Positions 26,842 through 64,000 of a DNA stretch of 64,000 bases are shown one piece after another. Numbering within the stretch: position 1 is the stretch's first letter; every line of letters starts with the position of its first letter. Made by a program: the position numbers and the translations under genes. The stretch is from Mobula hypostoma (Eukaryota): contig NC_086119.1 in NCBI RefSeq assembly GCF_963921235.1, forward strand, positions 46,748,001 to 46,812,000, in the 5' to 3' direction. Under the pieces are notes generated by a model, which saw only the letters and a program-made list of their open reading frames with translations, made no database searches and had not been told where the DNA came from.

Positions 26842-26901
26842 ATGAAAAACACTCAAGGTAGAAAGACTCCAAGAAATAAGGGAAGTCGTCAATCTGCTAA
26901 G
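26842..26901 (+). CDS. TTSP-like pseudoprotease, exon 1 (cytoplasmic tail MKNTQGRKTPRNKGSRQSAK)
   Basis: tttacag|ATG...AAG|gtaaat. 60 nt, phase 0 matches the next exon; basic tail typical of type II membrane proteins. The AG directly before the ATG implies a further upstream exon. Confidence 0.65.
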
Positions 26902-27270
26902 GTAAATTTCTTACTTACCAATACTCCCAGGTTCTGTTTGTGTCAAAGTTACAATGAATTTGCAGTGAATGTATTCTGTCTGTTTCCCATGTACTGTTCC
27001 CTAAGTGCTGAAAGAGTGCGATAATAATTCCCTTGCATCTCCTTGATAATAATTTGAATTAGTAATACTCCATTTGCTCCAGGGTCTCCCAGCATCCAGT
27101 ATTGAAAGTCAGGAAAACTTTTTATCTCATCCTGAAAGGCAAACTTAAGAGTAAAAATCAGAATCATATTCAGCTATATTGTCACTGACATATGTCATTA
27201 AATTAAAGCAACACACATCAAAGTTGCTGGTGAACGCAGCAGGCCAGGCAGCATCTGTAGGAAGAGGTGC

Positions 27271-27306
27271 AGTCGACGTTTCAGGCTGAGACCCTTCGTC
27301 AGGACT
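27271..27306 (-). ncRNA. Minimal type I hammerhead ribozyme motif (GUC site)
   Basis: reverse complement of 28556-28591. Confidence 0.7.
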
Positions 27307-28555
27307 AACTGAAGGAAGAGTGAGTAAGGGATTTGAAAGTTGGGGGCGGGGGGCAGATCCAAAATGATAGGAGAAGACAGGAGGGGGAGGGATGGAGCCA
27401 AGAGCTGGACAGGTGATAGGCAAAAGGGATACGAGAGGATCATGGGACAGAAGGTCCGGGAAGAAAGACAAGGAGGCGGGGGGGGGGGACCCAGAGGATG
27501 GGCAAGGGGTATATTCAGAGGGACAGAGGGAGAAAAAGGAGAGTGAGAGAAAGAATGTGTGTATAAAAATAAGTAACAGATGGGGTACGAGGGGGAGGGG
27601 GGCCTTAGCGGAAGTTAGAGAAGTCGATGTTCATGCCATCAGGTTGGAGGCTACCCAGACGGAATATACGGTGTTGTTCCTCCAACCTGAGTGTGGCTTC
27701 ATCTTTACAGTAGAGGAGGCCGTGGATAGACATGTCAGAATGGGAATGGGATGGGGAATTAAAATGTGTGGCCATTGGGAGATCTTGCTTTCTCTGTCGG
27801 ACAGAGCGTAGATGTTCAGCAAAGCGGTCTCCCAGTCTGCGTCGGGTCTCGCCAACATATAAAAGGCCACATCGGGAGCACCGGACGCAGTATATCAAGC
27901 TGAACATCTACGCTCTGTCCGCCAGAGAAGGCAGGGCTGAACATCTATGCTCTGTCCGCCAGAGAAAGCAGGGCTGAACGTCTACGCTCTGTCCACCAGA
28001 GAAAGCAGGGCTGAACATCTACGCTCTGTCCGCCAGAGAAAGCAGGGCTGAACATCTACGCTCTGTCCACCAGAGAAAGCAGGATCTCCCAGTGGCCACA
28101 CATTTTAATTCCACATCCCATTCCCATTCTGACATGTCTATCCACGGCCTCCTCTACTGTAAAGATGAAGCCACACTCAGGTTGGAGGAACAACACCTTA
28201 TATTCCATCTGGGTAGCCTCCAACCTGATGGCATGAACATCGACTTCTCTAACTTCCGCTAAGGCCCCCCTCCCCCTCATACCCCATCTGTTACTTATTT
28301 TTATACACACATTCTTTCTCTCACTCTCCTTTTTCTCCCTCTGTCCCTCTGAATATACCCCTTGCCCATCCTCTGGGTCCCCCCGCCCCCTTGTCTTTCT
28401 TCCCGGACCTCCTGTCCCATGATCTTCTCGTATCCCTTTTGCCTATCACCTGTCCAGCTCTTGGCTCCATCCCTCCCCCTCCTGTCTTCTCCTATCATTT
28501 TGGATCTCCCCTCCCCCTCCAACTTTCAAATCCCTTACTCACTCTTCCTTCAGTT

Positions 28556-28591
28556 AGTCCTGACGAAGGGTCTCAGCCTGAAACGTCGACT
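28556..28591 (+). ncRNA. Minimal type I hammerhead ribozyme motif (GUC site, predicted cut after 28587)
   Basis: agtc-CTGACGA-agggtctcagcct-GAAAC-GTC-gact. Confidence 0.7.
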
Positions 28592-30514
28592 GCACCTGTT
28601 CCTACAGATGCTGCCTGGCCTGCTGCGTTCACCAGCAACTTTGATGTCTGTTGCTTGAATTTCCAGCATCTGCAGAATTCCTGTTGTTTACGTCATTAAA
28701 TTTGTTGTTTCACAAGGAATTCGAGTAGGAGGTCCACTGAAGTGCTGGTTACTAAAGTGTACTAGTTAGTAAAGAGCTGCATAACCAGACTTTTACTGTC
28801 CGGCTAAAAGTAAATAAGAGCACAGCTCTTGTGCCTGATGTGGTCCATATGTTTGGATGAATGCCTAATGCTCCCCTCTACCAGTTGGGAAGTAGTTAGT
28901 TGGGCAGATACATTGGGGATATTTAAGAAACTCCTAGATAGGCACATGGATAAAATAAAAATGCAGGGTGATAGGATGCGTAGGAGGGAGGGGATTGATC
29001 GTGGGGTAGGTTAAGAGGTCGGCACGACATCATAGGCTTAAGGGCCTGTACTGTGCTGTATTATTCTATGTCTATGTTCTAATTGTGATATTGATTGAGG
29101 GAAACTAGAGTGGGGCTGTGTTTAGAACAGCATCATGTTTCAGAATGTAAATAAGATGATCCGGGTCTGCCACCCAGGCAAATGAGGTCACTTTTTCTCA
29201 GTTGCCTCTAATCTCCTTTGTGTCACCAGACCGCGGCCTCAACTCCCACCCCAGAGGCTGATCCAAGACTTCTGCTAAGTGTAAAAATGCCCACAGTCCC
29301 TGTTACAGAAGGAGACTGCTTTGACAAAATTCTTCTCTCAGTCAGAAACCAATCACTGTGAAAGGTTCATAACATTTATTATATACAGTAAATAAATGGT
29401 AATTGCTTCTTCGCTTTACGACATTTCGGCTTACGAACCGTTTCATAGGAACGCTCTACCTTTGGATGGCAGGGGAAACCTGTAAACATTTTTCCAAATT
29501 ATCCATGTGTGGTCCGAAACAGGTATTGATTACATATGACATTTAACAAGTTCAATTTACACAAGGCAGCAATCATCAAAAAGCCGTTCAAGATGGCACC
29601 CATAAATGACACGACCAACGGCAACGTTTTCCAGACAGTCCATGAAACCATTTCTTTTACCTCTTTTATTTCTGCTACTGAGCTGCAGATGATTGCAACC
29701 AGTGGTTTATATTTTGATGGTGTATTTTGGGGCCAATTGAGTGATCTGGCACTTTGATGTCTCTAAGGGAGCTCAGTGAGGTTGGCAGCAGAGTGTGAAG
29801 TCTGGCAGCCTGTAAGCCTGGACATGGGGCATGAGCCCATGATTGACTCCATTGCTTCCCTCTGATTTGAGGTGTCGAGTTGGCGAAGACAAGAGCGGAG
29901 TGCGGGTGGGTGCTTTGCGCCATCTGTCTGTTTTTGATCAGTCTTCCTCTCCCTCTCACTAGCTGCTGTTGGAGGAAAGTGCAGGAGTCCTGCCTTCCAC
30001 GTAGCGGGGATTGATCTGCGAGGCTTGTGGACTTGTTTTGGGGGAACGTTGAGGTTCATGTTGCATGTACTTCTGGATTCTGGTTGGCGAAGACTGGTTC
30101 TAGAGCCTGCAGTCAGCTAGCAGTGTGGAGCTTAACTGAACTAAACAAAATACTTATGGTTTGATGTTGATATTCTATGTGTTGTTCACTCACTATCTGC
30201 TGTTTGTGCAATTTGTTCTTTTAGTGCACGTAAGGTGTTGGATGTTTCCTCTGAATGGGTTCCATGGTGTTTCTTCATTTTGTGGCTGCATGAGGGAGGG
30301 CTAATCTCAAAGTTGCATTCTGTATACATACTTTGGTTAAAAAATGTACTTTGAATCTTTTGAACCAAGTTAATCGAATTTTTAAAGCATCATGTTTTGG
30401 TTCTGTCCAACCCAAAAGCATCCTGTTTTGCATAGACATTACAGAGTCAAATAAAGTGTCTATTGCTCGAGTCGCGTGGATACCTATGGAATGCTTCTTT
30501 TTTATTGTGAGCAA

Positions 30515-31040
30515 TTTTGGGCTTCTTATCTAAGAAAGGATGTGCTAACATTGTAGAGAGTTCAAAGGGGCTTCACAAAAATGATTTCTGGATTAAAAGG
30601 CTTGTCATATGAAGAGCGTTAGATGGCTCTCGGCCTGTGCTCACTGGACTTCAGAAGAATGAGGGTTAACCTCATTGAAACCTATCGAATGTTGAAAAGA
30701 CTGAATAGGGTGGATGTGGAAAGGATGCTTCCTATGGTGTGGGAGTCTAACACCATAGGACACAGCCTCAGAATAGATGGGTGTTCTTTTAGAATGGAGA
30801 TGTGGAGAAATTTCTTAGCCTGAGAGTGGTAAATCTGTGGAATTCATTGCCACAAGCGGCTGTGGAGGCCAAGTCTATGTATATTTAAGGCAAAGGTTGA
30901 TAGATTCTTGATTAGTCAGGGATACGGGGAGAAGGCAGGAGATTGGTGCTGAGAGGGAAAAATGGATCAGCCATGATGAAATGGTGGAGCAGACTCAATG
31001 GGCCAAATGGCCTAATTCTCTTCCTATATCTTATGGTCCT
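30515..31040 (+). mobile_element. CR1 LINE 3' end
   Basis: LGLCSLDFRRMRVNLIETYRML. Confidence 0.85.
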
Positions 31041-33372
31041 ATTAGTGAATCGGTTCTGTTGTTACATCAGTGTAATAACTTCATGCATATCATGACTGAA
31101 GCCGGTTCTTTCCTTAAGGATGTGTAGAAACTGAATTGCAGTGTTTAAACACATATGGTAGGATTTTAGATTCCAAATCAGATGGATATTAGATCTTCTG
31201 GATTATGGATTTAGCAATATCACCACCAGATTTCCAATAATGTACCTACAGCAGGTTTTGGGAGAAATCGGAACTATAACATTGTACACTCCCTGAGCCT
31301 TCACATGGGATTCAGCCTTCACAATAAAACAGAAAGATGATCATAAAAAGGAAGTATAAAATGGTGGTGGTGCACATTTATCCCAGATGCTGAAATTAAT
31401 TCACGTCTTTTGTTGGTCATCTTATATTTCAAATTAATAAAGCATCCGTGTCAACAAGGTGGGTGTAGGTGTGAGGTGATGACTTTGCCTATTCATTACC
31501 AGGTATTAAATATTACAGCTACCTCCCTTTTCATTAAAGACTTGATATGTAATTTTATCCAGGGTGAAACTTATGACAATGGCTGGCTCCACAATCAAAA
31601 CTGACATCGTTCCTGATTCTTTATTCAAAAACAAATATTTGTAGAAAGATGCCCTGTTTGACTGGCTCCCCACCAATCACACTAAATGCTCATTCCCTCC
31701 AGCTTTGGCTCACATTGACTGCAGTGTGTATCATTTACACCAGGGGCTCCAAACCTTTTTTAAGCCATGGACCCCTACCAAAGGGTCCGTGGACCCCCGT
31801 TTGGGAACCTCTGATCTACAGAAGACACTGCAGTTACTGAAATCACAGTTCCTCTGACAGCACCTCATAAGTCACACCACCTTCACCAGCAAGAAGGACA
31901 AGGGCAGCAATGCACAGGAGCACCACTACCTGCAAGTTGCCCTCCAAGTCTTACACCATCCTGACTTATTGCTGGTTCTTCCTGTCCTGGAACTGCCTCC
32001 CCTACAGCGCGGTAGAAGAGCTGCTGCATTGCAGCATCAGAGGCTAGGTTCAATCCTGACTGACCCTGTACCGCTTTCTCCGCATTCTAAAGAATCGGAG
32101 GTGGATAGGTCAATCGTCCGCTGCAAGTTGCCACCCGTGCATGGATGGGTACTAGAGAACGGGGGCAATTGATGGGAATATGGGGAGGACAGAAGTTAAA
32201 GGAATTAACATAGAATTAGTGTAAGTGGGTGGTTGCTGGTCTGTGTGGACTTGATAGGGTGAAGATACGGCATCTCTAAACTCAATAACTCTAGCATTGG
32301 AAGAAAACCTTCATCTGAAACAGTTCAAGAAGGTGACCCATTATCACCTCCTCAATTAGGGATGGGAAGTGATGCCCAGTTTCCAAAATAAATTTTTTAA
32401 ATATTCTTTCCCTTCTTTGAAGACCAAGCATGGCATAATCCCATCTCTTTATCTCCCCTCCTAACACCCCGTAATACAGTTGATGAAGCCAGTCATCCCT
32501 CATTTTCTCTCCAATCATTCTACATGATCGCATTAGACTCTGCGCCTTCTCCTTTTGTCAGGCTTAATATCAGGTTTCTATTGAGAAGGGGCAAGGAAAA
32601 CTATTTAGAATTTGGAGTGAATCCATTAACCTTTGACTCCATGTTACCTCTTTGTCTCTATAGGTAGTGGGACAACCAGGTGACTTTCCCCTGATACTCC
32701 ATCTCATGAGGCCAAGTTGTGGACATTTCCAACTGGGATGTCTTTAGCGACTCCCAGCTCTGGGATCTGGGAAGCTACATGTGGCTAGCAGTAGGAATAA
32801 CACCTGGCATTTCTGTGCTCATGTGTGAACGTCTAAGTATCTCTAAATGAAGGTGTCCAGTGAAGTGTGAGATCTCTTCATTCTCCACTTCCCTACCTTA
32901 CACTGCTGTTTAATTGCTTTCATGCGAGCCTTAAGAAATAAGAGGCCTTTCCTCACTGATCCTGTTTAGGTCCCGGGTACCTGCTGCACCATGTGTAACC
33001 CACACACATAAACAACCAAAGCAGCAGTGTGTGCTGGGGTGTTATGACACAATAATTCACTTAACCATCACATTGAGCCGACGAGGGATTTGAACTCATG
33101 AACACTGTTTCCATGCAGTGGTGCCACAGGGTAAGGGTGATAGCAAGCAGTTATAGGAAAGTAAGCAATGCTACTGAGGTGCATGCAGCTCGAAGTACCT
33201 GCTGGGAGAAAATAAACAGGTCACAGAGGTGACAGAGGGAGAAACAATTGTTGCCCATTCAGGTTGCTGTTGAATGAGCCAAGGTAAACCAATCTGAAAC
33301 TTGCAATGGCTAATACAAGAAACTTCCTCATGTACATCCCAATGTAATAATGAAATCATTATGTATCTGCAG

Positions 33373-33490
33373 GAGAAGGCAGCCAAGAGAAAATGTCCCA
33401 GTTGTTGCTTCAAATGTCTTCCGATCATCAGTGGATTAATTCTCTTCATATTGATAGCAGGATCCATTACACTGATTCGTGGTGTTCTTG
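33373..33490 (+). CDS. Exon 2: Cys-rich juxtamembrane segment and transmembrane helix (EKAAKRKCPSCCFKCLPIISGLILFILIAGSITLIRGVL)
   Basis: ctgcag| acceptor and G|gtgaga donor; ~20-residue hydrophobic run after basic residues; phase 0>1. Confidence 0.85.
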
Positions 33491-34782
33491 GTGAGAAAGC
33501 AATTCAATTCATAGAACTTACATGTCAACATAATTGTATGCTTGATGTTGAGATAGCTCGCCGTTCCAATGATCAATTCTGAAACAGTCTCACAACAAAC
33601 TTAGTTCCTGATAACTTCACAACAAGGGTCTCAAGTACAAAAAGAATGGATAACTGGACTCTGAGCATAACTTGGTGCTGTCCACGTGGATGTCTCTAAT
33701 GCTGGGAGCAGCACCTGGACTGCAAGGTCAATACCGGGACTAAGAAGCCTCTTTGCACTCCAGTGCAGAATTTCACACATTGGGAGCTCTAACCTGGTGC
33801 ATGTTTGGGAGAAGGTGGCTGGGTCCTTTAAAATAAATTGATTTCTGGTTCTTGGTTTTAGTGATGGAGCTGATTGATTGATAACTTGTAATTTTCCAGG
33901 CTGAATTGGTCCTTAAAACATTTCAATGACCTGTAGCTGAATCCATCCCTGATTTAACATGGATTGGATAAGTTTCCTGGGCCTCAGGAAATCCAGCTGC
34001 TGAAGGGAGGCATTGGATCAAACTGCTAGGGGAAGCTTCAAACATCTGAGCATCAAACCTTGAGGCAGAGTGGGGGAGAGTTTGGTTGCTTTCCCATGAC
34101 CTCAGGCTCTAGCCCCCACCATTGAGCATATTCTCAACAATCCGATTCACTCTAAGATTGGCCCATGCCATTGGCTCTGAATTTTTCTACTGAATCTATG
34201 TACCACCTCTTATGTGGGAATCTGAAATAAAAACAGACCAAAAGCACTCCATGAGCCAGGCACCATCTGGGGAAGAGCAGCAGAATTAATGCTTCAGGTT
34301 TAAGAATGCAAACATTTTCTTGCCATCTTCTGCAAAGGAATCCGGGGTCCTAGTACATGAAACAAAATGTTAGCATTCAGTTACTACAAGTAATTGCGAA
34401 GGGAAATGACCATATTGCCAGAGCCATGAGGATTAAAAGTAGGAAGTTTTGCTGCAGCTCTACAAGGCATCGGGGAAAAGGCACCTGGAGTGCTGTGCAC
34501 AGCTTTGATCATATTATGAAGGCGGATAGACTTGCGCTGGTGTCAGTGCAGTGAAGGAGCTGTAGTTTGATTCCTGAAGTGAAGTGTTCGATGTATGTTT
34601 GAGCTGGTTGGACAACTGATCTGCAATACCTTTCACCAAGTGCCCCCTGATCTCCTGAGTGTTTCACCTTTCTGGTTCCTGCTGATTTAATGAAGCTTCT
34701 TCCCTCAAATGAGGAGTATCAATCACTTTCTATCAAACCAACACGAGACATGACCTAACTAAGGAGCTGTGCTTTCTTTCAG

Positions 34783-35057
34783 AGGTCCCAGTGATCATCA
34801 ATGGCTTTGCTCCCAATCGCCGTTTGAGTACAGTAGCCACAACGATCCTGAGCAGCACCAGCCAAACACTCAACTTCTCCACCAGTGCCAGTAATGACAC
34901 AAGTGCAACAAACACATCTGATTCAAATAACTACAGCCCAAATGCCAGATGCTACTTTGTGGGAGAGATGGAGGTAAAAGAGAATATCTCCATTGAACTC
35001 AACAGTGATCCCAGCTCAGAAGAATATTTGAGGATTACAGAAGGTGTAGAGAAGATG
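34783..35057 (+). CDS. Exon 3: Ser/Thr-rich stalk and start of SEA domain (...CYFVGEMEVKENISIELNSDPSSEEYLRITEGVEKM)
   Basis: ctttctttcag| acceptor and ATG|gtaagt donor; 'YFxGxxxI...L..PSSEEY' SEA pattern; phase 1>0. Confidence 0.88.
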
Positions 35058-36669
35058 GTAAGTCTTTTAGGCATTTTAAAACTGAAAGCAGTTTTTAAAA
35101 TTATTTATTGACATACAGCATGGAGTAGGCCTTCCTGGCCCTTTGAGCCGTGCTGCCCAGCAATCCCCAAATTATTCCTCGCCTAATCACAGGGCAATTT
35201 ACAATGACTAATTAACCTACCAGCCAGTAGATCTTTGGACTATGGGAGGAAACTGGAGCACCCAGAGGAAATCCACACAGTCACGGGGTGAACATACAAA
35301 CTCCTTACAGGCTGCAGCGGGAATTGAACCTGGGTTGCTGGTATTCTACTGTTTTCTAATCGGCATACTTTTTCTGTTGCCTGTACTGCACTACTGTGCT
35401 ACCTTAAAAGAAGCTGCTGAGATTAAAAAAATCATTTTATTAGCAATAATTTTTTAAATTTCTATCTTTGAATTAAAATGTATATGGAATAGATAATGTA
35501 GTGTTATCCCCAAGTGAAATACAAAATGCTGAGCAACCTTGGCAAGATGGATGTGGAGAGAATGTTTCCTCTTGTGGGAGAGTCCAGGTCACTGTTCAAG
35601 AATAACCATTACCCATTTAAGGTCAAGACAGGGTGACTTTTTTTTTAGTCTCAGAGGATGCTGAGTCTCTGGAACTCTTTGCTCAAAGGCCGATGGAAAG
35701 AAATTCTTCTTTGAAGGAGATTATTGAAAAAACAAGGGAGAGTAAATTTACCACAAGCTGGAGAAGTTCAGAATGCAGGGTTGAATCTGTAGTCAGGTTA
35801 ACCAGGATCTTATTGAATGATGGAGCAGGGAAGTGGGGGTGAGTGATCTACTCTTGCTCCTGATTGATACTGTCAAGTTAGCAGTGGGGGAGGTGAGAGG
35901 CAGGGTTGTCACTAGTGTTTGGCAGTGCTGAATCATAGCTTGTTGGCACTTGGGACAGTGATGGTGAGAGAATATTTCATTTGATAAAGCTTGCTATGGC
36001 AGAGATCTGCATCTTCTGGAATGGTCACATATAATGTTTTTCACCATACTGCATTGGGATTGTTGTTTTTGAAGCTGGCTTTCACTTTTCAGTGTGGAAG
36101 AATGTCACAGAGCACGTTTGAGTAGTGATCTGTTTTGAGTACTGTCGTGTCAGCAACTTCCTATTCCTCCTTTGGTTTCTCAAGTTCAAGTTCAAGATTA
36201 ATTGTCATTCAACCATACATGAATTTCTATGAATACAGCCAAACAAAACAGTGTTACTCCAGGGCCAAGATGCAAAACACAATACCAACAAATATTCACA
36301 GCACAAAGCACACATGGCATATAAGCCAGCAATAAACTACAGTCACACACAAAAATACTCTTAATACTCAAAATGGACTTCAATTCTTTCAGAGAAATTA
36401 ACATTAAATCCAAGGGTTAAGGTTTAAGGGTAATTTTACAGACTTTTGCTTGGTAAACATTTTGCCTAGGAGAAACAATTATCAAGGTGAGCATTTCCAA
36501 CATATGCATTGATTTGGCGTTAAAGGTTTACAGTCCCCAAGGAACTTTCCCTCCAGTAACTAACTTCCTAAAATGACCTGCACTGTGCTCGTTGGTTGAT
36601 TTGCTTCATCTTGCTAATTATTTTTATGAGAAATTTGTGAATAATCTATTCCATTTTTTTTCTTGTCAG

Positions 36670-36737
36670 ATAAATGGTACATACAAAACTTCAGCATTCA
36701 ACACGGTGTATATAACTACTAAAGTCATTGGAATAAG
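36670..36737 (+). CDS. Exon 4: SEA domain middle (INGTYKTSAFNTVYITTKVIGI)
   Basis: long pyrimidine tract, tgtcag| acceptor, AG|gtgaga donor; phase 0>2; too short for the ORF track. Confidence 0.85.
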
Positions 36738-39464: not shown

Positions 39465-39613
39465 TCCTGTCTACTCTGCTATCCGGTTCTGGATGCACCT
39501 CGAGTGCAGTGTGAGATTCCGTACAGAGGAAATTACAGCAGTCTTTCAGAAAGCAGAGGGGACCATCAATTTTCCCAACAACCAGCAGCTGAAGGTTCAA
39601 CTCAACACCATGA
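39465..39613 (+). CDS. Exon 5: SEA domain C-terminal part (SPVYSAIRFWMHLECSVRFRTEEITAVFQKAEGTINFPNNQQLKVQLNTM)
   Basis: ttacag| acceptor and A|gtaagt donor; phase 2>1. Confidence 0.82.
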
Positions 39614-42406: not shown

Positions 42407-42523
42407 TTATATGGTGTGAGAACAGCATGCCAAGATGTTCCAGTGGATACTGCATTAATAAAAACAATGGATTTTGTGATGGCATTGAAGATTGCTGGAA
42501 TGGAGAAGATGAAGCAGTTTGTG
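42407..42523 (+). CDS. Exon 6: LDL-receptor class A repeat 1 (IWCENSMPRCSSGYCINKNNGFCDGIEDCWNGEDEAVC)
   Basis: tttttttcag| acceptor and G|gtcagt donor; six Cys and CDGxxDCxxGxDE motif; phase 1>1. Confidence 0.92.
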
Positions 42524-47183: not shown

Positions 47184-47327
47184 AAGGCCATTCAACCACC
47201 CTGAACACACATCAGCAGTGTACAGCGGGCATGATGGTATGTGCAGATGACAACTGTTTAAATAAAGACAGCGGCTTCTGCGATGGTGATTCTGATTGTT
47301 CTGATGGAAGTGACGAATGGAATTGTG
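47184..47327 (+). CDS. Exon 7: LDL-receptor class A repeat 2 (...CTAGMMVCADDNCLNKDSGFCDGDSDCSDGSDEWNC)
   Basis: acacag| acceptor and G|gtgagt donor; canonical DCSDGSDE; phase 1>1. Confidence 0.93.
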
Positions 47328-48824: not shown

Positions 48825-48957
48825 ATTGTGAAATATCCCGTGCAACTGATTGCTCGTCAGTAGTGACCCTCACCGGAAGAAAGTATAGAAATCCTTGCCA
48901 AGGCTCTCTTATCTCCAACAAGTGGGTGCTGACCACTGAAAGCTGTGCTGAAGACAG
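48825..48957 (+). CDS. Exon 8: start of trypsin-like domain, His57 region degenerate (DCEISRATDCSSVVTLTGRKYRNPCQGSLISNKWVLTTESCAED)
   Basis: aaccag| acceptor and AG|gtataa donor; CQGSLISNKWVLTTESC corresponds to CGGSLISxxWVLTAAHC; phase 1>2. Confidence 0.9.
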
Positions 48958-54480: not shown

Positions 54481-55905
54481 AGTCTTAGATAATTATGGAT
54501 CGTTTTTGAATGCCTGCAAATTCATTGCCTTGGACAGACTACTGTCTGTGGTGGAGACAGCCGAAATAGTCCTGCAGTAGCTCTTCAGGATCCATGGTTT
54601 TCCAGTGGACATTGTGTCAGATCGCAGTCCACAATTCGCGTCACGTTTTAGGAGGGTGTTCTTTAAGCCGATTGGGGCAACAGCAGATCTTTCCTCTGGG
54701 TTTCACCCACAGTCCAACAGCCAGATGAAGCAGGTGAACCGAGCTTTGGAATGAACCCTATGATGCCTCTCCTGCAGCAGGCCTTCAGGATCCATGGTTT
54801 TCCTGTGAATATTGTGTCGGACTGCAGTCCGCAATTCGCATCACATTTCTGGAGGGTATTTTCCAAACTGATTAAGGCAACAGTGAGTCTTTCTTCTGAG
54901 TTTCACCTGCACGGGAGAACTAGGATATACAATAGAATGTACCCTCAGATGCCTGGCCTCTGAAAGACCATATGAGTGGTTCTACTGTTTGATGAGGGCA
55001 GTGGTCGCCCACAACACTTTATGGCATTTGGTGCATGGTACGTCCCCTTTCAAATGCCAATTTGGGTATTCTCCACCACTCTTCCCTGAGCAGGAAGCCA
55101 AAGTTTGGGTTCTTGTGGCCAAAGATCTTGTCCGATGCCACAGAGCAAAATGCACTTGGGCAAGGGAGATTTTGCTAGCTTCTACTCAGAACGCTGAAAT
55201 AAAGGCTAACTGCAAGAAAAGAAGGGGACCAGATTTGCAGCCTGGCCAGCAGGTCTGGCTGTCAACCCAGGAATAGCCTTTCTGAGTGGAATCCAGGAAA
55301 TTGGTGCCCAAGTTCATTGGACCCTTCAAGATTCTCAGGAAAGCAAACCCAAAGGCTTACACCTTGCAACTCCCCAAGACCCTCAGGTCAATCCAACTTT
55401 CCACATTTCCAAATTAAAACCTATGAACACCAGCCCTTTAGCCCCTCCACCACTCGTCCCACAGCTGCCCAAGTTTGTCGATGGGGAACAGGTCTTCACT
55501 GGGAGAAGAATTTTGGATTCATGAACTGTTCAGGGTGTTCGGAGGTTCCTCAAGGACTGAGAAGGATTCCGACCCGAGAAATGGCGATGGGTTCCTGAAA
55601 GGGACATCTTGGATCTGGCTCTCATCCATGACTACCATCATCATCTCACCAAGCCGCCAGGGCCGCCAGGAGTCAACCTTAGGGGAGGGGGTCTTGTTAC
55701 AACATGTACCCAAATGCGCCAGCTTACAGGGTTTAGATGCTCTAACTCACCGGAGTATGGGTAGCTGGCACAGCCCCTTGAAAGATTCAGGACTGTCCTG
55801 CTAATTGGCAGTCATGTTTGGGGCACTGAGAATTAAGTATTTAAAGAGCACCTGAACCCAGCCACAATTCTTAATCGTAAGCCCAACCTGAGATATCGTC
55901 TAGCG

Positions 55906-57082
55906 CAGGGGTCTCCAACCCTTTTTGCACTGCGGACTGGTTTCATATTGACAATATTCTTGCGGACCAGCCAACCCGGGGGCGCGGGTAGGGTTGCCAA
56001 CGGACAAAAGTAGCAGTCAAATACGTTGTTTACCGCGAGACTACAATGACCATGAAGCCTTGCGCGGCACAAGTGCACATGCGTTTACGTACCGATTTTT
56101 TCTATAAATCGTTTTTGGCGATTCTGTTCGGGGGAGGGGAGGGTGGTGTTAATCACGACGGGAATATCGGTGATAAGTGGCTAATATACTCAATTTCGTT
56201 TCTAAAAGGGATTATCTAATGAATTTAATATTAAACACACAGCGCATATTTTCCTCGCATGAATATAGCGATAAGTCTATTATCAGGGGAGCTTGAAGTA
56301 AGTGTTGAACAAACTTCCAGTAGAAGTGGTAGAAGCAGGTTCGACATTATCATTTAAAGAAAAATTGGATAGGTATATGGACAGGAAAGGAATGGAGGGT
56401 TATGGGCTGAGTGCAGGTCGGTGGGACTAGTTGAGAGTAGCGTTCGGCACGGACTAGAAGGGCCGAGATGGCCTGTTTCCTTGCTGTAATTTTTATATGG
56501 TCATATAAGTAAGTCAATAGCATCGTAACATTTTAAGTACCATTTGGATATTAAACACACAGCACATATTTTCCCCGTATGAACATATAAAATCATTACA
56601 ACACACCAATATCGCTGGATCAGTGGGAGCCCTGGGCTGAATACTTGTTCCCTGCAACAAGACGGTCCCATCGAGGGGTGGTGGGAGACAGCGATACTCG
56701 AAGGGGGTTCCTCATGTCCGGTCTATTCTGCAATTTGGTTTTTGTTGCATTCATTGCAGAAATATGTTGGAAATGGAAGCAACGTTTTCAGTGCTTTCCC
56801 GTCTATCTCAGGATATTTAGCCTTGACTTTGATCCAGAACGCCGGCAGAGATGTTGTGTCAAACATACTTCTCAGCCCGCCGTCATTTGCAAGCTCGAGG
56901 AGTTGATCTTCTTCCCGCGCTGACATGGAAGACACGCGGGTAATGACCTCGCATGTGTCATGGCTCAACAGTGGGTGTGGCAGGGAATGAGGAAAGGTGC
57001 AGCTGACTCATATCGCCAAATCATATCTTTTCCTCACGGCCCGGTAGTGCATGCTTTGCGGCCCGGTGGTTGGGGACCGCTG
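55906..57082 (-). mobile_element. hAT (Charlie-like) non-autonomous DNA transposon in the 3' LTR; itself contains a CR1 tail (~56305-56500)
   Basis: TIRs CAGGGGTCTCCAACC / GGTTGGGGACCGCTG; 8-bp TSD GTCTAGCG (single copy in the 5' LTR); hATC-like FWIKVKAKYPEI..KALKTLLPFPT. Confidence 0.93.
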
Positions 57083-57270
57083 GTCTAGCGTTTTGTTTTG
57101 TGCTCAGTTCCCGATCCAGTTTGATACCGTGCCTTGATCCTAGCCTCAGATACTCCAGCATCTGGGTCCACAGCATCCTTGTGAAGGGCTCTCATCACAG
57201 TTCCAGGATTTTGTCCTGACGATGGTAAAGGAATGGTGATGTATTTCCAAGTTATGAAGGCATGTGCCTT

Positions 57271-57798
57271 TGTTAGGAGGAAGCAGGTTCACAGGTTTGG
57301 TAAATGAGACAGAAGGCACTGATTACAAATCAACACAATAACCATTTATTTACAGGCAAACAGTAAAACATTCAATCAAACATCTAAGTCACCCTACATT
57401 ACAGAAACTACAACACTAACCATTCACTAACACTTCAAACTCAACAGGTACTTCATTAAGTCTCCCCAAGTTACACAACTACAAAACTAAACATTCAACA
57501 GATACCTACCTAAGTGTGCACGTGGCCCTCCTATATCTGCAGCAAACTTTCCCAATGGTTCTTCAGCACTGGTTGAGACCAAAATGTGAAGATGAGCCCC
57601 TGGAGACAGAGGAAGGCCTATGAGTCTCTTGCACGTGCTGTCCCTAAACCCTTCAGGTGCCTGGAAACTGACACTGGTGTTGTGGTGAGCAAGGTGACCA
57701 ATGGGAAGGAGGTGGTACATCCCTCAAAAGGCTCAGTCAACAACTGGCACAGTGGAAGGGGCTTTCGACTGGCAAATAAACTAACCCTTCACATTACA
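57271..57798. mobile_element. Probable solo LTR
   Basis: TG...CA termini with near-TSD GCCTT/GGCTT; splits a LINE tail. Confidence 0.55.
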
Positions 57799-58486
57799 GG
57801 CTTGGAGGGCAACTTCCAAGTGGCGGTGTTCCCAAGCTTTTGGTGTCTTTGTCCTTGCTGGTGGACGTCAAGTGTTTGGAGGGAGTCTTGACGAGTTGTC
57901 TGATAACAATGCAGAGAAATTACATCAGCACTCAGGTCAATGTCCCATTTAACACCAGAGACTCTTTACTCAGAAAAGAGAGCTAATACCTGAAACTACG
58001 ACAACTTTACTCAATAGACATAGGTAATTCCTCCAGGAAAATTCAGTGAATGGAGGAAAGCTCCATTGAAGTCATTCACATGTTATACAATTAACCCCAG
58101 TCATTTATGTGGTGGGGGTCACTGAGCTTGAGTGACAGGAAGTTTAACCAATCATCCTACTGACTGTGAATAATATTGTCACCATTTATGAAAGTTGCTG
58201 GTGAACGAAGCAGGCCAGGCAGCATCTCTAGGAAGAGGTACAGTCGATGTTTCGGGCCAAGACCCTTCGTCACCTCTTCCTAGAGATGCTGCCTGACCTG
58301 CTGCGTTCACCAGCAACTTTTATGTTTGTTGCTTGAAATTCCAGCATCTGCAGATTTCCTCGTGTTTGCATTGTCACCATTTCCCAGTTTTCAAAGTACA
58401 TCAATATTTTTCCTGCATTTCTTCTGCAAAAATGTATTCTTTATGGTTAAAAGTGATTTTAGCTTTGCTCATGATGTCTGTTCCAG

Positions 58487-58710
58487 TTCCTTCCAGTATA
58501 TTTGTGCTGGCTCTCCCAAGCTGACAAAATACAGGATTGAATCACGTTACACTCTGGACAGTACAGGTGAAGGTATTGCTCTCCTGCTTCTGGACTCCCC
58601 GGTGGCATTCAACGGCTTTCAGCCAATTCCTCTGCCCAGCCCTATGAATCAAACGGAAACAGCTCAAACCAGCTGCAAAGTCACAGGCCTGTGGAACACC
58701 ACACGTCAAG
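58487..58710 (+). CDS. Exon 9: trypsin-like domain, Asp102 region degenerate (...GEGIALLLLDSPVAFNGFQPIPLP...SCKVTGLWNTTRQ)
   Basis: gttccag| acceptor and G|gtaaga donor; GIALLLLDSPV ~ DIALLxLxxP, QPIPLP ~ QPICLP, CKVTGLW ~ CxVTGWG; phase 2>1. Confidence 0.9.
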
Positions 58711-59971
58711 GTAAGATAAGCTGCCATTTAGCATGCAGATACATGTTGTCTCGTGGAACAGTGCAGAACAGAAGGATTATATACAAAATAAAAGCAACAT
58801 GTCAGAGTGTTGCAACGTTTAGCCCTGCAGCCACACAGCTTTAGGCAATCAAGTTCGACCCAGACTCTGTTGCTCACCGGGACTTGACAGGCTGAATGGC
58901 CTCCTTTAGAACCAACATAAGGAAGTGTTGGAATTACTCAAAAGGTGAGACAGCATCTGTGGACAAAAGGGGAGGGTTACCTTATGAGGGTTCATTGTCC
59001 TGAAACATTAACTCTACTGCTCTCTCCACAGATGCTGCCTGACCTGCCACTTATTTCTGGTTTCCAGTATCTGCAGTTACCCTTCAACTTAAAGCTCCTT
59101 AGTGTCCTATTGCAAATACTGAGCGTGGTCGGCAAATGAAGTGGGGTTCAAACACGGGATAATTGGACCAAGGCACCCAATATTCAATCCCCCTTCTACA
59201 TCCTGCTCTCAGTTCACTTCTGGGAAGTAAATACACAGGAACTTCCGTACAGCACAGACTGAATCCCTAAAAGCCAAGAGCAGGGATACCACTCCGGGAA
59301 GTGGGCATCAGTGCAGCCGGATACTTAAAGTACATGCGAGGCTTCCAGCTGCATATTGGATACAGAACATAGAACAGTAAAACTCAGCAAGAGGCCCCGC
59401 AGCTCACGTTGTATGACGCAAATTAAACTAAACCGTTTTGCTTGCACATAATCTAAATCGTTCCATTCCCTGCACTTTCATGTCAGTGTCTAAGAGCCTC
59501 TTAGATGCCTCTTTCTTATCTGCTTCCACCACCCTGGCAATGTGTTCCAGACGTCTTTTACACTCTACGTTAAAAAAAATGCTTTGCACATCTTCCTTAA
59601 ACTTCCTCAATCTCACCTTAAAGGCATACCCTCTAATATTTGACTCTCCTGGAAAACAAAAGACTAATCTATCCTATCTGTGCCCCTCATTGTTTTATAA
59701 ACTTCTATCAGGTCCCCCCCTCAGCTCCCAACTCTTCAGAGAAAACAATCCAAGATGGAAATATATAGTGAGAAGGGAATAAAAAAGGTATCACAATAAC
59801 AGAAATGAAGAAAATAGGTCTAAAATGTTTGCAAAAATGATGTTATAGTCAGTGATTGGCATCTATATCCTTTCAATCTAAACTTTAATCCAATTAGCTT
59901 GTAAACCGTTTGTTCCTGGGGTCAGTTAGGTACCTGAATCGCAATCATCGACCTTCTGTTTCTTCCAACAG

Positions 59972-60048
59972 GTGAATGGTATGTGATTGCTTCTGATGAA
60001 CAACGGATCGTAGTACATGAAGTTTTTCAACATCTCAGAAACTGTCAG
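59972..60048 (+). CDS. Exon 10: shortened trypsin-domain exon ending in CQ (GEWYVIASDEQRIVVHEVFQHLRNCQ)
   Basis: ttcttccaacag| acceptor and CAG|gtacgt donor; phase 1>0; ends at the conserved CQ|GDSGG intron position. Confidence 0.8.
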
Positions 60049-60627
60049 GTACGTCTATACACTGCTGAATTTGTGTTTAGCAGAGGCAACATGCCTGTGC
60101 ATTCATTCTGCAGATGCTAACAATGAGTTTCAAGGCACATCCAATCGACATGCAGCACCTGTGTTTGCAATGTAACTCCTGACTCCTGTCCTGTCTGAGC
60201 TAAATTCTGGACCGTAAGGATTCCTGATCAGAAACCAGATTCTGACAGATAGGAGTGGGGGAAGATTTAAAGGGGACTTAAGGAGCACAAAGGGTGGTGG
60301 GTATATGGAATGAGAGGAGGAGGTATAATGAGTACAATTACAACATTTAGAACGTTTTTGGGACAGGTTCATGGAAAGGAACGGCATGGGGGTTTATAGA
60401 CCAAAGGCAGGCAAATGGGATCATCTTAGACAGGAATTTTAGCTAGGCCGCTGTGGTAGCGGAGAATTTAGTGCAATATTATTACATCTCAGGGCTTCGG
60501 AGTCAGAGATCAATCCCAGCGTCTTCAGTAAGGGGTTTGTAAGTTCTCTCTGTGGAGTGCGTGGGTTTTCTATAGGTCCTCCAAATTCCTCCCACAATCC
60601 AAAGATGTACCGGGTAGATTAACTAGT

Positions 60628-61165
60628 CATTATCATCATAGCTTGTCACACCAGACAGCCAGCCACTATAGTGTTGTTTGGTTGATGTTGAGCAGGTCAG
60701 TGTCAGCTAAATCAGGTGAGAGTGGGCAGTTGCGCAGAACGTGTTCAATGTTCTGCACCCTTTCGCCACACTCACAGGATTGGCTGGTCTTTCAACCCCA
60801 CTTCACCATATTGTCTCCCGTCCTACAAACTTCCGCTCTCGCTCTGTTGAGAGTGCACGACTTCTGTCTGTCAAGCAGTGCCTCGTCTGGCAACATTTTT
60901 GTGAGGTCTTGCACTGTGTTGTTTGGTGGGGTTCTGGCTTCTGTTTGTTGCCAGAGGTCAATCCTGTATGTTTGGGGGGGTATGTTCCGTGCGGTAGTTC
61001 CTCCACTGGAGCAAAGCTTTTCCACGACTTTAGGTGGTTAGAAACTGGCACATGATGGTATAGTGGGTGCCGTGGATCCAAGTTCTGTTTACCTTTTTCA
61101 ATTTTTGTTGTAGTGTGTCTTTGGATTTACAATGACCAATAAATCTTTTTTTTTGGTAAAAGGGA
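60628..61165 (-). mobile_element. RTE-like LINE 3' end inserted in a SINE
   Basis: TLNRARAEVCRTGDNMVKWG followed by a Cys motif; flanks agattaactagtcatt / agattaattggtcatt. Confidence 0.6.
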
Positions 61166-61419
61166 AAAAGATTAATTGGTCATTGTAAATTGACCCATGA
61201 TTAGGGGTTGTCAGGGGATGTGGACCGGTGCCCCTCAAAAGGCCAGAAGGGTCCATTCCACGCAGTATCTCTAGATAAATCTTAGTCAGCATGGATGAAT
61301 TGGGCAGAGGGGCTTGTTTCCACACTGTATAAGGTATTAGCTATTCAGTATGCTGGTTACTACTACAAGATGAGGACTCAAATTATTGAAGATAATATCC
61401 TGGGCTATCGAACAAAGAA

Positions 61420-62700
61420 CAGAACAGCTACATTGTCCGCTACATTTGCCTTTTTTTTTAACTTTTCCTGTCAGCCATGGTTAGTCCTCCTAGCTTTAGA
61501 ATACCTGTTCTTCTTTGGGATGTATCTATCCTGTGCCTTCTGAATTTCTCCCAGAAACTGCAGCAATTACTGTTCTGCCATCATCCCTGCTAGTGTGCCC
61601 TTCTGATCAACTTTGGCTAGCTCCTCTCACATGCCTTTGTAATCCCTTTACTCCACTGTAATACTGATATATCTGACTTCGGGTTCTCCCTCTCAATTTG
61701 CAGGGTGAAGTCAGTGATATTATGATCACTGTCTGCTAAGTGTCCCTTTACCGTAAGCTCCCTAATAAAATCCTGTTCATTATACAACACCCAATCCAGA
61801 ATTTCCTTTTCCCTAGTAGGTTCAAATACAATCTGCCCTAAAAAGCCATCTCATAGGCATTATACAACTTCTCTCTCGGGATCCAGCACCAATCTGATGT
61901 TCCCAATCTACCTGCATATTGAAATCCTGCATGACTATCAAAACATTGCCCTTTTGACATGTGTTTTCTATCTCCCATTGTAATTTGAAGCACACATTCT
62001 GGCTACTGTTCAGGATTCTGTATATAACTCCCATCATGGTCTTTTTACCCTTGCAGTTTCTTAACTCTACCCACAAGGATTCTACATCTTCTAATCCTAT
62101 GTCACCTCTTTCTAAGGACTTGGTTTATTTTTTTTTACCAATAGAGCCATTCCAACCCTCTGCCTACCTGCCTGTCCTTTCAATATAATGTGTACCCTTG
62201 GATGTTAAGCTCCCAACTATGATCTTTAAACCATGACTCAGTAATGCCCACAACATCATACTAACTGATATCTAACAACGTCAATGTCTAACTGATCATC
62301 TACCTTATTTCATATACTGCATGGATTCAAATATAACATCTTCAGTCCTGTACTCACCACCCTTTTGGATTTTGTCCCCCACTTACACTGCAATTTTGCT
62401 CGATCATCTGCCTGTACCTCCTGACAGTCTTAAAGCACACTGTATACCAACTGTCCCATCATGATCAGCCCTAAAACTGGTTTCCCATCCCCCTGCCAAT
62501 TTAGTTTAAACCCTCCCCAATAGCTCTAGCAAACTTGTCCGCAAGGGTATTGGCCCTTCTCGGGTTCAGGTATAACCTATCTCTTTTGTACACATTCTAC
62601 CTCCCCCAGAAGAGATCCCAGTGTTCCAGAGATCTGAAGACCTACCCCCTGCACTAGTTTTCAGCCATCTGCCAAATCATCTCATTCTTACCCTCAATGG
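61420..62700 (-). mobile_element. CR1 LINE endonuclease region
   Basis: WVELRNCKGKKTMMGVIYR...DFNMQVDW. Confidence 0.85.
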
Positions 62701-63921
62701 TGCAAGTTATTGGAAAAAATTAGAAGGCAAGTAGAATATTGAACTTTGTTGTTAAGAGATTGGGGTACACATCTAGGAAAGATTTCCTGCAGATGTGCAG
62801 GACGTTTGTGAAGCCACAGCTGGAGCTTGGCGTACAGTTCTGGCCTCTTGGTGGCTGGATTCCTGGAGCAAGGGGGCTGTCCTATGAGTAGAATAGGCCT
62901 AGCCTCTGGGGTTTGGAAGAAAGGAGGTGATCACAGTGCAACATATAATAAACCAAGGAGACTTGTCCGGGTAGAGCTAGGAGAATTTTTCCACATTGCG
63001 GAAGATCAAGATAAGGGACTGGATGCTTAAGAGCGAAATGATGAGGACCTTCTTCAAAGAGTGCTCATGAATCTTTGAATTCCCTACCCTAGAGAATTAT
63101 GCTGCTGAGTCATTAAATGATTAGAATACTTAGTCTGACTTTGGGGTAATCAAAGGTCTGGGCATGGAAATGTCTCAACCCTGGATAGATCAGATCGACT
63201 ATGCCATGTAAACCTTACTTCTATTTATTTTCATTTTCTCATAAAGTAAAAACCAAATACAGCATATCGTACTTATATTCAGTCTCTTTCGGGACTTCCA
63301 ATCCATGGGAGTTCTTATCTTCCGAGTCCTTCCTCCATGTAATCTATTTTATTCAAAAACAGAAATGCTGGAAGAATTCAGCCAGTCAAACAACATCTGT
63401 GGGAACAGAAACCAGTTAATAGTTCAGGTCAGAAATGGAGAGGAAGAGTTACAGTTTCCCACACAGAGCTGAGACAGGAGTGCAAGCTCAAAGCTGGTTT
63501 GGTTAAGAAAGTGTTCTGCCAGCATTTTAGTTAGATTTTACTTCAGATTTCAGCATCTGCGATGTTATTTGCTTTCCATTACTATTGGAGTTTGGATGTC
63601 ATCTCTCTGATGATTTGAGTTTATTGTTGTGTGCACAAGTATGGTGTGGTAAAAGTACAATGAAAAACGTGTTTCCACCAACAGCGTCACAGTCACACAG
63701 ATTCAGAAGCACACAGGGCATACAATTGTACACAAACTGTACACAAAGTATACAAGAGAGAAGAAAAAGACTGGAAAACAAGACATTAGTGCAAGAACAC
63801 AACTGGAAATGAGTGCACAGTAGTGTAAAAGTTGGTTAGGGTGGGACTCCTCCTTCCCTGAGTCCAAAGGCCTGGTATAGTCCACTGGATTTAATCACCT
63901 TGTGTTTGTGGTTTGTTGCAG

Positions 63922-64000
63922 GTCCAAAGAGGCAGCCCTTTAGTGTGTCTTGAAGCAAATGAGACCTGGGTCCTCACAGCAGTCAGAGGTGGATGTTCGA
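63922..64000 (+). CDS. Exon 11 (partial): Ser195 region degenerate (VQRGSPLVCLEANETWVLTAVRGGCS...)
   Basis: ttgttgcag| acceptor; VQRGSPLVC ~ GDSGGPLVC and WVLTAV ~ WxLxGIVS; runs off the window. Confidence 0.88.

What the first reader, a model, noticed from the sequence alone, without database searches (positions are those of the whole stretch)
26842..64000. Intact type II membrane pseudoprotease: TM-stalk-SEA-LDLa-LDLa-dead trypsin domain
Seen: eleven GT-AG exons with phases 0,1,0,2,1,1,1,2,1,0 join into ~481 codons with no stop or frameshift. All three catalytic motifs are altered: TAAHC>TTESC (H57>S), DIALL>GIALL (D102>G), CQ|GDSGGPLVC>CQ|VQRGSPLVC (S195>R; G193 and D194 also lost). Known: TTSPs are active proteases, and in TMPRSS9 only one of three protease domains is inactive. 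SEA+2xLDLa without CUB domains matches no human TTSP that I know. Inference: heavy divergence with a preserved ORF, splice sites and structural cysteines points to a selected non-catalytic receptor, decoy or adhesion protein, possibly lineage-specific, rather than a decaying pseudogene.
Basis: partly seen in the sequence, partly recalled or inferred. Interest (0 to 1): 0.9.

Follow-up and report, generated by a model that had tools for sequence, protein, structure and literature searches.

The report
Shark-and-ray membrane protease that cannot cut
This devil-ray gene encodes a membrane-anchored relative of the matriptase-type cutting enzymes that has lost every part needed to cut, yet sharks and rays have kept it intact under selection, so it most likely works as a surface binding protein.

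Summary
The window is Mobula hypostoma. The 11 GT-AG exons, with phases 0,1,0,2,1,1,1,2,1,0, thread exactly onto RefSeq XP_062887499.1 ("transmembrane protease serine 6-like", 511 aa). The window holds 481 codons. Thirty more residues and a stop lie just past its end, so no further protease domain follows.

The order is cytoplasmic tail, signal-anchor helix, Ser/Thr-rich stalk, SEA, LDLa, LDLa and a trypsin-fold domain. His57, Asp102 and Ser195 are replaced by Ser, Gly and Arg.

Single-copy orthologues exist in four batoid lineages and four sharks. All lack the triad, exon lengths match, and a P450 gene lies next to the gene in each of the four other species whose locus was listed. dN/dS is 0.27-0.44 among rays and 0.35-0.42 between shark and ray. 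A skate cDNA shows that exons 3-11 are spliced.

No orthologue was found outside elasmobranchs. The closest sequence relatives are matriptase (ST14) homologues, about 31% identical over LDLa-LDLa-protease domain.

[quoted passage not shown] It is already predicted in RefSeq but is misnamed and uncharacterised. Its function, probably ligand binding or scaffolding, is inferred and not shown.

The parts
26842..26901 (+). Exon 1: start codon and residues 1-20 of the basic cytoplasmic tail. Donor GTAAAT, phase 0.
   Evidence: Exact threading of P0001. The N-terminus MKNTQ... is conserved in Amblyraja, Narcine, Scyliorhinus and Heptranchias.
33373..33490 (+). Exon 2: basic, Cys-rich juxtamembrane segment (KRKCPSCCFKC) and the signal-anchor helix LPIISGLILFILIAGSITLI. 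Phase 1.
   Evidence: The highest Kyte-Doolittle window is at residues 31-55. Flank charge is +4 on the N side and -1 on the C side, so the N-terminus is inside (type II). The TM exon is also present in Hemitrygon and Amblyraja.
34783..35057 (+). Exon 3: nearly invariant juxtamembrane motif EVPxIxNGFAPNR, a Ser/Thr-rich N-glycosylated stalk, and the start of the SEA domain. Phase 0.
   Evidence: The stalk is 44% Ser/Thr and has 4 sequons. Its length varies between species.
36670..36737 (+). Exon 4: middle of the SEA domain (INGTYKTSAFNTVYITTKVIGI). 68 nt, phase 2.
   Evidence: The 68-nt length is the same in Hemitrygon, Amblyraja and Chiloscyllium.
39465..39613 (+). Exon 5: end of the SEA domain. 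149 nt, phase 1.
   Evidence: Pfam SEA covers residues 134-196. AlphaFold gives an alpha/beta module at residues 114-219, and the Foldseek alignments to TMPRSS11 proteins start at query residues 112-114.
42407..42523 (+). Exon 6: LDLa module 1. 117 nt, phase 1 to 1. This is the most constrained part of the gene.
   Evidence: Pfam Ldl_recept_a scores 26.2 bits on the exon alone. There are six invariant Cys. dN/dS is 0.06-0.12 between Myliobatiformes and skates.
47184..47327 (+). Exon 7: linker and LDLa module 2, with the canonical calcium-cage motif CDGDSDCSDGSDE. Phase 1 to 1. Present in batoids only.
   Evidence: The exon is present in Hemitrygon, Narcine, the skate cDNA and the Amblyraja genome. 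It is not found in the corresponding Chiloscyllium intron.
48825..48957 (+). Exon 8: start of the trypsin-fold domain. It has no R/K|IVGG activation site and carries TTESC in place of TAAHC (His57 to Ser). Phase 2.
   Evidence: Pfam Trypsin scores 20.6 bits on the exon alone. Alignments apply. No conserved basic residue precedes the domain in any orthologue.
58487..58710 (+). Exon 9: GEGIALL in place of xDIALL (Asp102 to Gly), IPLP in place of the Cys122 motif, Cys136, and a conserved NQT sequon. Phase 1.
   Evidence: An exhaustive phmmer search with this exon found only the family and three polyprotease proteins.
59972..60048 (+). Exon 10: a shortened segment that ends in Cys191-Gln192. About 27 residues, including Cys168-Cys182 and the Asp189 position, are missing. 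Phase 0.
   Evidence: The 77-nt length is the same in Hemitrygon, Amblyraja and Chiloscyllium.
63922..64000 (+). Exon 11 (first 79 of 168 nt): VQRGSPLVC in place of GDSGGPLVC (Ser195 to Arg), Cys201 and Cys220. The exon runs 89 nt beyond the window to a stop codon.
   Evidence: The orthologous last exons are 168 nt long and end in a stop in L002 and L003.

Best explanation
The region holds a real, expressed, single-copy gene of Mobula hypostoma. [quoted passage not shown]

Shown: the architecture is tail, signal anchor, mucin-like stalk, SEA, LDLa (two in rays, one in sharks) and a trypsin fold. All three catalytic residues, the oxyanion-hole Gly193, Asp194, the activation cleavage site, Cys122, the 168-182 loop with the S1 specificity position, and part of the 214-220 wall are replaced or deleted. 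The same losses are seen in every shark and ray orthologue. The gene has been under purifying selection since before sharks and rays split.

Inferred: the ectodomain is a permanently single-chain, non-cleaving binding module displayed on the cell surface. The calcium-binding LDLa modules are the most constrained part and are the likeliest ligand-binding site. The remodelled protease-like domain and the invariant juxtamembrane motif would provide further contact surfaces. Three extra invariant cysteines leave the ectodomain with an odd number of cysteines. On this reading the protein acts as a receptor, co-receptor or scaffold that binds a partner without cleaving it. Examples of such partners are a substrate or a regulator of an active membrane protease.
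For: The gene model equals the RefSeq protein and is free of stops. Domains are supported by Pfam, by Foldseek top hits TMPRSS6, TMPRSS11 proteins, TMPRSS7 and ST14, and by a collinear LDLa-LDLa-protease-domain alignment to an ST14 homologue (31% identity, E=2e-28). Residue losses and deletions are shown. Orthologues in 8 other elasmobranchs all lack the triad, and position 195 varies (R/T/K/G). Exon lengths 68/149/117/133/224/77 are identical from ray to shark. A P450 gene is listed in the DNA flanking or overlapping the gene in Hemitrygon, Amblyraja, Hemiscyllium and Chiloscyllium. dN/dS is 0.27-0.44 among rays, 0.30-0.37 for the protease-like domain and 0.06-0.12 for LDLa1. Every bootstrap interval for the whole gene and for the protease-like domain lies below 1. 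Shark versus ray gives 0.35-0.42. The tree shows a very long stem (2.0 changes per site, support 100/100) followed by short crown branches. A skate cDNA carries spliced exons 3-11. The type II orientation follows from charge and hydropathy.
Against: No ligand, tissue or phenotype is known, so the binding role is inference. dN/dS of 0.3-0.4 is only moderate constraint. The AlphaFold model is mediocre (mean pLDDT 59; protease-like domain 40-89 by 10-residue block), so surfaces cannot be read from it. The only cDNA found starts from an alternative 5' exon, and its ORF lacks the membrane anchor. No RNA evidence from Mobula itself was available. The parent TTSP subfamily is unresolved: the protease-like domain scores no more than 47 bits against any other S1 domain available, and its place in the tree is a polytomy.
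Confidence: 0.75

Rival explanations
1. The gene is a decaying, non-functional pseudogene of a TTSP whose ORF happens still to be open.
For: The catalytic triad, the activation site and several loops are lost. The stem branch is very long.
Against: The ORF is intact in at least 9 species on both sides of the shark-ray split. Exon lengths and splice sites are identical. dN/dS is 0.27-0.44 with bootstrap intervals below 1. All 23 ectodomain Cys columns are conserved in every orthologue that holds them, except Cys480 in Scyliorhinus. A spliced cDNA exists.
Confidence: 0.02
2. It is a decoy that traps canonical protease inhibitors (Kunitz-type HAI proteins or serpins) or substrates of active TTSPs in its dead active-site cleft.
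For: Dead proteases can keep their substrate-binding clefts. The protein sits on the membrane as matriptase does, and its LDLa modules resemble those of ST14 homologues.
Against: The elements that form the S1 pocket and the substrate-binding strand are deleted. These are residues about 165-190, including the Asp189 position, and part of 214-220. Gly193 and Asp194 are replaced, and there is no activation cleavage to order the pocket. A canonical P1-in-S1 interaction is therefore not expected.
Confidence: 0.08
3. It is mainly a mucin-like surface glycoprotein that protects or senses through its SEA domain and O-glycosylated stalk. The protease-like domain would be only a structural cap.
For: The stalk is Ser/Thr-rich, varies in length and has many sequons, with GSTGSI-type repeats in skates. 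A SEA domain follows it.
Against: The stalk is short (about 45-90 residues) and is the least constrained part (dN/dS 0.3-0.9). LDLa1 and the protease-like domain are more constrained. The canonical SEA self-cleavage motif G|SVVV is not present; the sequence there is IGISPVY.
Confidence: 0.1
4. It is still a hydrolase that uses unconventional catalytic residues.
For: A Ser two positions after the lost Ser195 (GSP) is invariant.
Against: No conserved His or Asp replaces residues 57 and 102. Position 195 itself varies (R/T/K/G). The oxyanion hole and the S1 pocket are lost.
Confidence: 0.03
5. The window shows only the first unit of a TMPRSS9-like polyprotease, with active domains downstream.
For: By exon 9 alone, the nearest non-family hits are multi-domain TMPRSS9-like proteins of gar, bowfin and newt.
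Against: The RefSeq protein stops 30 residues after the window. Orthologous last exons end in stop codons in L002, L003 and L004. The skate cDNA has a stop followed by 865 nt of 3' UTR. In Amblyraja, Hemiscyllium and Chiloscyllium the next listed gene downstream is a P450 on the other strand.
Confidence: 0.01

Closest known systems
Matriptase subfamily of TTSPs (ST14/matriptase, TMPRSS6/matriptase-2, TMPRSS7)
   Same: Both are type II anchored, with a SEA domain near the membrane and tandem LDLa modules directly before a C-terminal S1 domain. These are the best full-length sequence hits (ST14 homologues, 27-31% identity) and the best structural hit (TMPRSS6).
   Different: There are no CUB domains and only 1-2 LDLa modules. 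The activation site, the Cys122 link and the triad are absent, and the S1 pocket is deleted. The protease-like domain lies on a very long branch, and its sister group is unresolved.
HAT/DESC subfamily (TMPRSS11A-G)
   Same: Both have a short tail, a signal anchor, a single SEA domain and one S1 domain, and are of similar size. Foldseek aligns query residues 112-500 to whole TMPRSS11 proteins.
   Different: HAT/DESC proteins have no LDLa modules and are active, zymogen-activated proteases (general knowledge).
Inactive domains of polyserases (third domain of TMPRSS9; gar and newt TMPRSS9-like proteins)
   Same: Both are S1 domains in membrane-bound proteins that have lost catalytic residues. The newt domains even read TSARC or TSASC at the His57 motif, as the shark orthologues do.
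   Different: Those dead domains sit beside active ones in the same chain and keep full-length loops. Here the only domain is dead and shortened. The tree does not join them.
Other S1-fold pseudoproteases: haptoglobin, HGF/MSP, protein Z, azurocidin, PRSS37
   Same: The chymotrypsin fold is kept and reused for binding after loss of the triad. PRSS37 and the ADAM pseudoproteases act at cell surfaces without catalysis (PMC9114714).
   Different: As far as I know, none of them is a type II membrane protein with SEA and LDLa modules. This family is restricted to elasmobranchs and has far larger deletions around the former active site.

Membership tests
Type II transmembrane serine proteases (TTSP) | N-terminal cytoplasmic tail and an uncleaved signal-anchor helix (type II topology) | tested here: met
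   There is one hydrophobic stretch at residues about 36-56. Flank charge is +4 on the N side and -1 on the C side. No dedicated topology predictor was run.
Type II transmembrane serine proteases (TTSP) | Stem region made of modules such as SEA and LDLa | tested here: met
   Pfam finds Ldl_recept_a twice above its cutoff. SEA is found in 8 of 8 members that hold the region at E<0.01, but P0001 is just under the cutoff at 24.7 against 26.4 bits. The structural alignments to TMPRSS11 proteins start at query residues 112-114, upstream of the protease-like domain.
Type II transmembrane serine proteases (TTSP) | C-terminal chymotrypsin-fold (S1) domain | tested here: met
   Pfam Trypsin scores 37 bits. 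Foldseek gives probability 1.0 to many S1 structures, with TM by target about 0.6.
Type II transmembrane serine proteases (TTSP) | Catalytic triad His57/Asp102/Ser195 | tested here: not met
   The residues are Ser, Gly and Arg in Mobula. All three are lost in every orthologue.
Type II transmembrane serine proteases (TTSP) | Zymogen activation motif R/K|IVGG with a Cys1-Cys122 link to the stem | tested here: not met
   Thirteen residues including the motif are deleted. No conserved basic residue is present. Cys122 is replaced by Pro.
Matriptase subfamily | Two CUB domains between SEA and the LDLa modules | tested here: not met
   No CUB hit was found in any member, whereas the ST14 homologues carry PF00431.
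TMPRSS9/polyserase | Several S1 domains in one chain | tested here: not met
   There is one domain, followed by a stop codon 30 residues past the window.
S1-fold pseudoproteases (functional class, not a clade) | S1 fold kept, catalytic residues lost, gene under purifying selection | tested here: met

The most novel reading that the evidence does not exclude
Before sharks and rays diverged, a matriptase-type membrane protease was converted in one burst of change into a dedicated, calcium-dependent cell-surface receptor or co-receptor. It lost its CUB domains, activation site, S1 pocket and triad. Through its LDLa modules, the remodelled protease shell and an unpaired cysteine, it now holds a partner, such as a substrate or regulator of the active matriptase/TMPRSS6 pathways, without cleaving it. 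That would make it the first TTSP-derived pseudoenzyme with a regulatory role, and a vertebrate-lineage-specific one.
Probability: 0.25. Interest if true: 0.7.

Novelty: new variant of a known kind. Interest (0 to 1): 0.5.

Why it matters
In mammals, TTSPs are treated as uniformly active enzymes. A member that has been kept since before sharks and rays split, after losing all catalytic and substrate-pocket elements, shows that the TTSP scaffold can be reused for a non-proteolytic surface function. It adds a clean natural example to the pseudoenzyme field. It also has a practical use: databases call this family TMPRSS6-like, enteropeptidase-like, serine protease 30-like or uncharacterized, and those names wrongly imply a protease and orthology to mammalian genes. 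The function is unknown and the lineage is hard to study experimentally, so the immediate impact is moderate.

Tried and rejected
(1) Per-exon Pfam scans gave only borderline Trypsin hits (17-21 bits). The spliced RefSeq protein was needed for clear domain calls.

(2) NCBIfam gave nothing, as expected for a library aimed at prokaryotes.

(3) All three word-indexed protein searches (whole protein, family profile, N-terminal half) found no relative outside elasmobranchs except ST14 homologues. The one exhaustive search used exon 9 only, so a very distant orthologue could have been missed.

(4) The protease-like domain could not be assigned to a TTSP subfamily. PDB phmmer puts kallikrein and plasmin on top at only 39 bits. 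A family HMM scores every other S1 domain at 47 bits or less. The ML tree leaves the family in a polytomy.

(5) DNA for Narcine, Scyliorhinus and Hemiscyllium could not be fetched.

(6) I looked for P450 exons on the minus strand of the window and found none.

(7) The spliced protein built from the window could not be passed to the other tools as typed text. The identical database protein P0001 was used instead.

(8) Literature searches found no paper on a TTSP pseudoprotease or on this family.


Full report
**Identity and gene model.** An exhaustive phmmer search with the 74-residue exon that holds GIALL returned a 511-aa protein that is 100% identical over that exon (P0001). That protein is RefSeq XP_062887499.1, "transmembrane protease serine 6-like" of Mobula hypostoma.

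An exact threader placed P0001 on the window as 11 exons. All internal junctions are AG...GT and the phases are 0,1,0,2,1,1,1,2,1,0. The last exon continues 89 nt beyond the window and encodes 30 more residues and a stop. No further protease domain follows.

**Anatomy.** The parts, in order along the protein, are as follows.
- A basic cytoplasmic tail ends in a Cys cluster (CPSCCFKC).
- One hydrophobic helix follows. Flank charge is +4 on the N side and -1 on the C side, so the topology is type II.
- A nearly invariant juxtamembrane motif (RGVLEVPxIxNGFAPNR) comes next.
- A Ser/Thr-rich stalk of variable length carries four sequons.
- The SEA domain scores 24.7 bits in Pfam against a cutoff of 26.4. 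It is found at E<0.01 in all 8 members that hold this region. It is modelled as an alpha/beta module, and the Foldseek alignments to TMPRSS11 proteins start at query residues 112-114.
- Two LDLa modules are each coded by a phase 1-1 exon. The second has the textbook calcium-cage motif CDGDSDCSDGSDE.
- A trypsin-fold domain ends the protein (Pfam 37 bits; Foldseek probability 1.0, TM about 0.6 by target, to many S1 structures).

**What is lost in the protease-like domain.** Alignments to plasma kallikrein, to an ST14 homologue and to a set of active and inactive S1 domains agree.
- His57 is Ser, Asp102 is Gly and Ser195 is Arg. Gly193 is Val and Asp194 is Gln.
- About 13 residues that include the R/K|IVGG activation site are deleted. 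No orthologue has a conserved basic residue there.
- Cys122, the partner of the stem cysteine, is Pro.
- About 20 residues of the 60-80 loops are deleted.
- About 27 residues between positions 165 and 190 are deleted. These include Cys168-Cys182 and the S1 specificity position 189.
- Part of the 214-220 wall is deleted.
- Three canonical disulfides remain (42-58, 136-201, 191-220).
- Three extra cysteines (C312, C320, C361) are invariant in the family. They leave an odd number of ectodomain cysteines.

The domain can therefore neither be activated as a zymogen, nor form an oxyanion hole, nor accept a P1 residue in an S1 pocket. This goes well beyond a simple loss of the triad.

**Conservation.** Sequence searches found one orthologue each in the following species.

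| Species | Protein identity to Mobula |
|---|---|
| Hemitrygon akajei | 88% |
| Narcine bancroftii | 69% |
| Amblyraja radiata | 65% |
| A second skate (cDNA) | 74-78% by alignment |
| Scyliorhinus canicula | 46% |
| Hemiscyllium ocellatum / Chiloscyllium punctatum | 43% |
| Heptranchias perlo | partial model only |

- Every orthologue lacks the three catalytic residues. The residue at position 195 varies (R, T, K, G), as expected if it has no catalytic role.
- Exon lengths 68, 149, 117, 133, 224 and 77 nt are identical in Mobula, Hemitrygon, Amblyraja and the shark Chiloscyllium.
- A P450 gene is listed in the DNA flanking or overlapping the gene in Hemitrygon, Amblyraja, Hemiscyllium and Chiloscyllium. 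In the last three it lies just downstream on the opposite strand. This supports orthology.
- The second LDLa exon is present in all four batoid lineages. Amblyraja has an intact copy that its RefSeq model skips. The exon was not found in the corresponding shark intron.

**Selection.**
- Pairwise NG86 dN/dS among rays is 0.26-0.44 for the whole gene and 0.30-0.37 for the protease-like domain.
- LDLa1 gives 0.06-0.12 between Myliobatiformes and skates, the lowest of any part.
- Bootstrap 95% intervals exclude 1. Mobula-Amblyraja gives 0.19-0.38 overall and 0.19-0.46 for the protease-like domain.
- Against a Chiloscyllium coding sequence rebuilt from intact exons, dN/dS is 0.35-0.42. dS is near 1, so this comparison is approaching saturation.
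- In an ML tree the family is monophyletic on a stem of 2.0 changes per site (support 100/100) with short crown branches, and batoids group together (98/96). The pattern is a burst of change followed by constraint.

**Expression.** A 2461-nt Logan contig (SRR13269334) from a skate begins with a SMART template-switch oligo. It carries exons 3-11 as one contiguous ORF with a stop and a 3' UTR, so nine exons are spliced as predicted. This transcript uses an alternative 5' exon, and its ORF starts at a Met inside exon 3, without the membrane anchor. Whether that isoform is productive is open. No RNA data from Mobula were available to me.

**Relatives.** Outside elasmobranchs no orthologue was found.
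- The best full-length hits are ST14 (matriptase) homologues of Amia and Polyodon. The Mobula LDLa1-LDLa2-protease-like region aligns collinearly with the last two LDLa modules and the protease domain of the Amia protein (31% identity, E=2e-28).
- The best structural hits are TMPRSS6, the TMPRSS11 proteins, TMPRSS7 and ST14.
- The protease-like domain alone is too diverged to place. A family HMM gives at least 160 bits to members and at most 47 bits to any other S1 domain at hand. The tree is unresolved at that node.
- I therefore file it as TTSP-derived, probably from the matriptase subfamily, but not as a member of any named subfamily. CUB domains, triad and activation site were tested and not met.

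**Mechanism.** Shown: the protein is a conserved, non-catalytic, type II surface glycoprotein. Inferred: it binds something without cleaving it. The LDLa modules are the most constrained part, and in other proteins such modules bind basic residues of ligands through their calcium cage (general knowledge). They are the likeliest binding site. The remodelled protease shell, the invariant juxtamembrane motif and an unpaired cysteine may add contacts or a covalent link.

A decoy for canonical inhibitors is unlikely because the S1 pocket is gone. Pseudogene, cryptic hydrolase and polyprotease readings are rejected by the data above. Membrane pseudoproteases with adhesion or scaffold roles are known elsewhere, for example PRSS37 and ADAM3 (PMC9114714). 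I found no paper on a TTSP pseudoprotease or on this family.

**Verdict.** The gene is already predicted in RefSeq but is misnamed and uncharacterised. It is a new variant of a known kind: an S1 pseudoprotease on a TTSP chassis, specific to elasmobranchs. Interest is moderate, because pseudoproteases are common and the function is unknown, but the case is unusually clean and old. A separate finding in this genome (s1-141770) describes another conserved dead S1 protease, a granzyme homologue. It is unrelated to this locus.

Noticed in passing
P0002 (Lepisosteus oculatus XP_069044036.1) and P0007 (Pleurodeles waltl TMPRSS9-like): The gar protein is 4066 aa long and matches the exon-9 query in 14 stretches. 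Motif scans find 13 His57-type motifs, of which only five read HC, and several Ser195 motifs read GDTGG or GDGGG instead of GDSGG. The newt protein has five S1 domains, four of them without His57. Large arrays of mostly dead protease domains may be worth their own look.
   Followed up: partly
L003:34705-41664 (-); also the L002, L004 and Hemiscyllium loci: A P450 gene lies just downstream of the pseudoprotease gene on the opposite strand in Amblyraja, Chiloscyllium and Hemiscyllium. In Hemitrygon the listed P450 model spans the whole locus on the opposite strand. The two Amblyraja ORFs read like a CYP2-family gene (my reading, no search run). None of its exons lies inside this window.
   Followed up: partly
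L001:1-180: The skate cDNA starts with a SMART template-switch oligo and an alternative first exon spliced to the exon-3 acceptor. Its ORF starts at the Met of VPMIING and lacks the membrane anchor. The Hemitrygon RefSeq model starts at the same Met, although an intact TM exon lies upstream at L002:8535-8654.
   Followed up: partly
L003:25755-25895: The Amblyraja RefSeq model (XP for LOC116988939) skips an intact second LDLa exon that the skate cDNA includes. This is either alternative splicing or an annotation gap.
   Followed up: partly
L004:56186-56262 and about 60282-60425: The Chiloscyllium GenBank model GCC36857 ends in intron read-through. The true last two exons are intact further downstream, so the shark gene is complete.
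   Followed up: yes
window about 28.6 kb, 40.6 kb and 58.3 kb (+ strand): The same interspersed repeat, which translates to ...AAWPAAFTSNF.VCC..., occurs in the first, fifth and eighth introns of the gene. Other repeat-like duplicated stretches lie at about 6988 and 13086, and the window shows a strong GC-skew swing at 6-10 kb.
   Followed up: no
P0004 / P0010 (Heptranchias perlo): Both annotated isoforms (214-215 aa) join the membrane anchor directly to the protease-like domain, skipping the stalk, SEA and LDLa. I did not check whether this is a real short isoform or an incomplete model.
   Followed up: no
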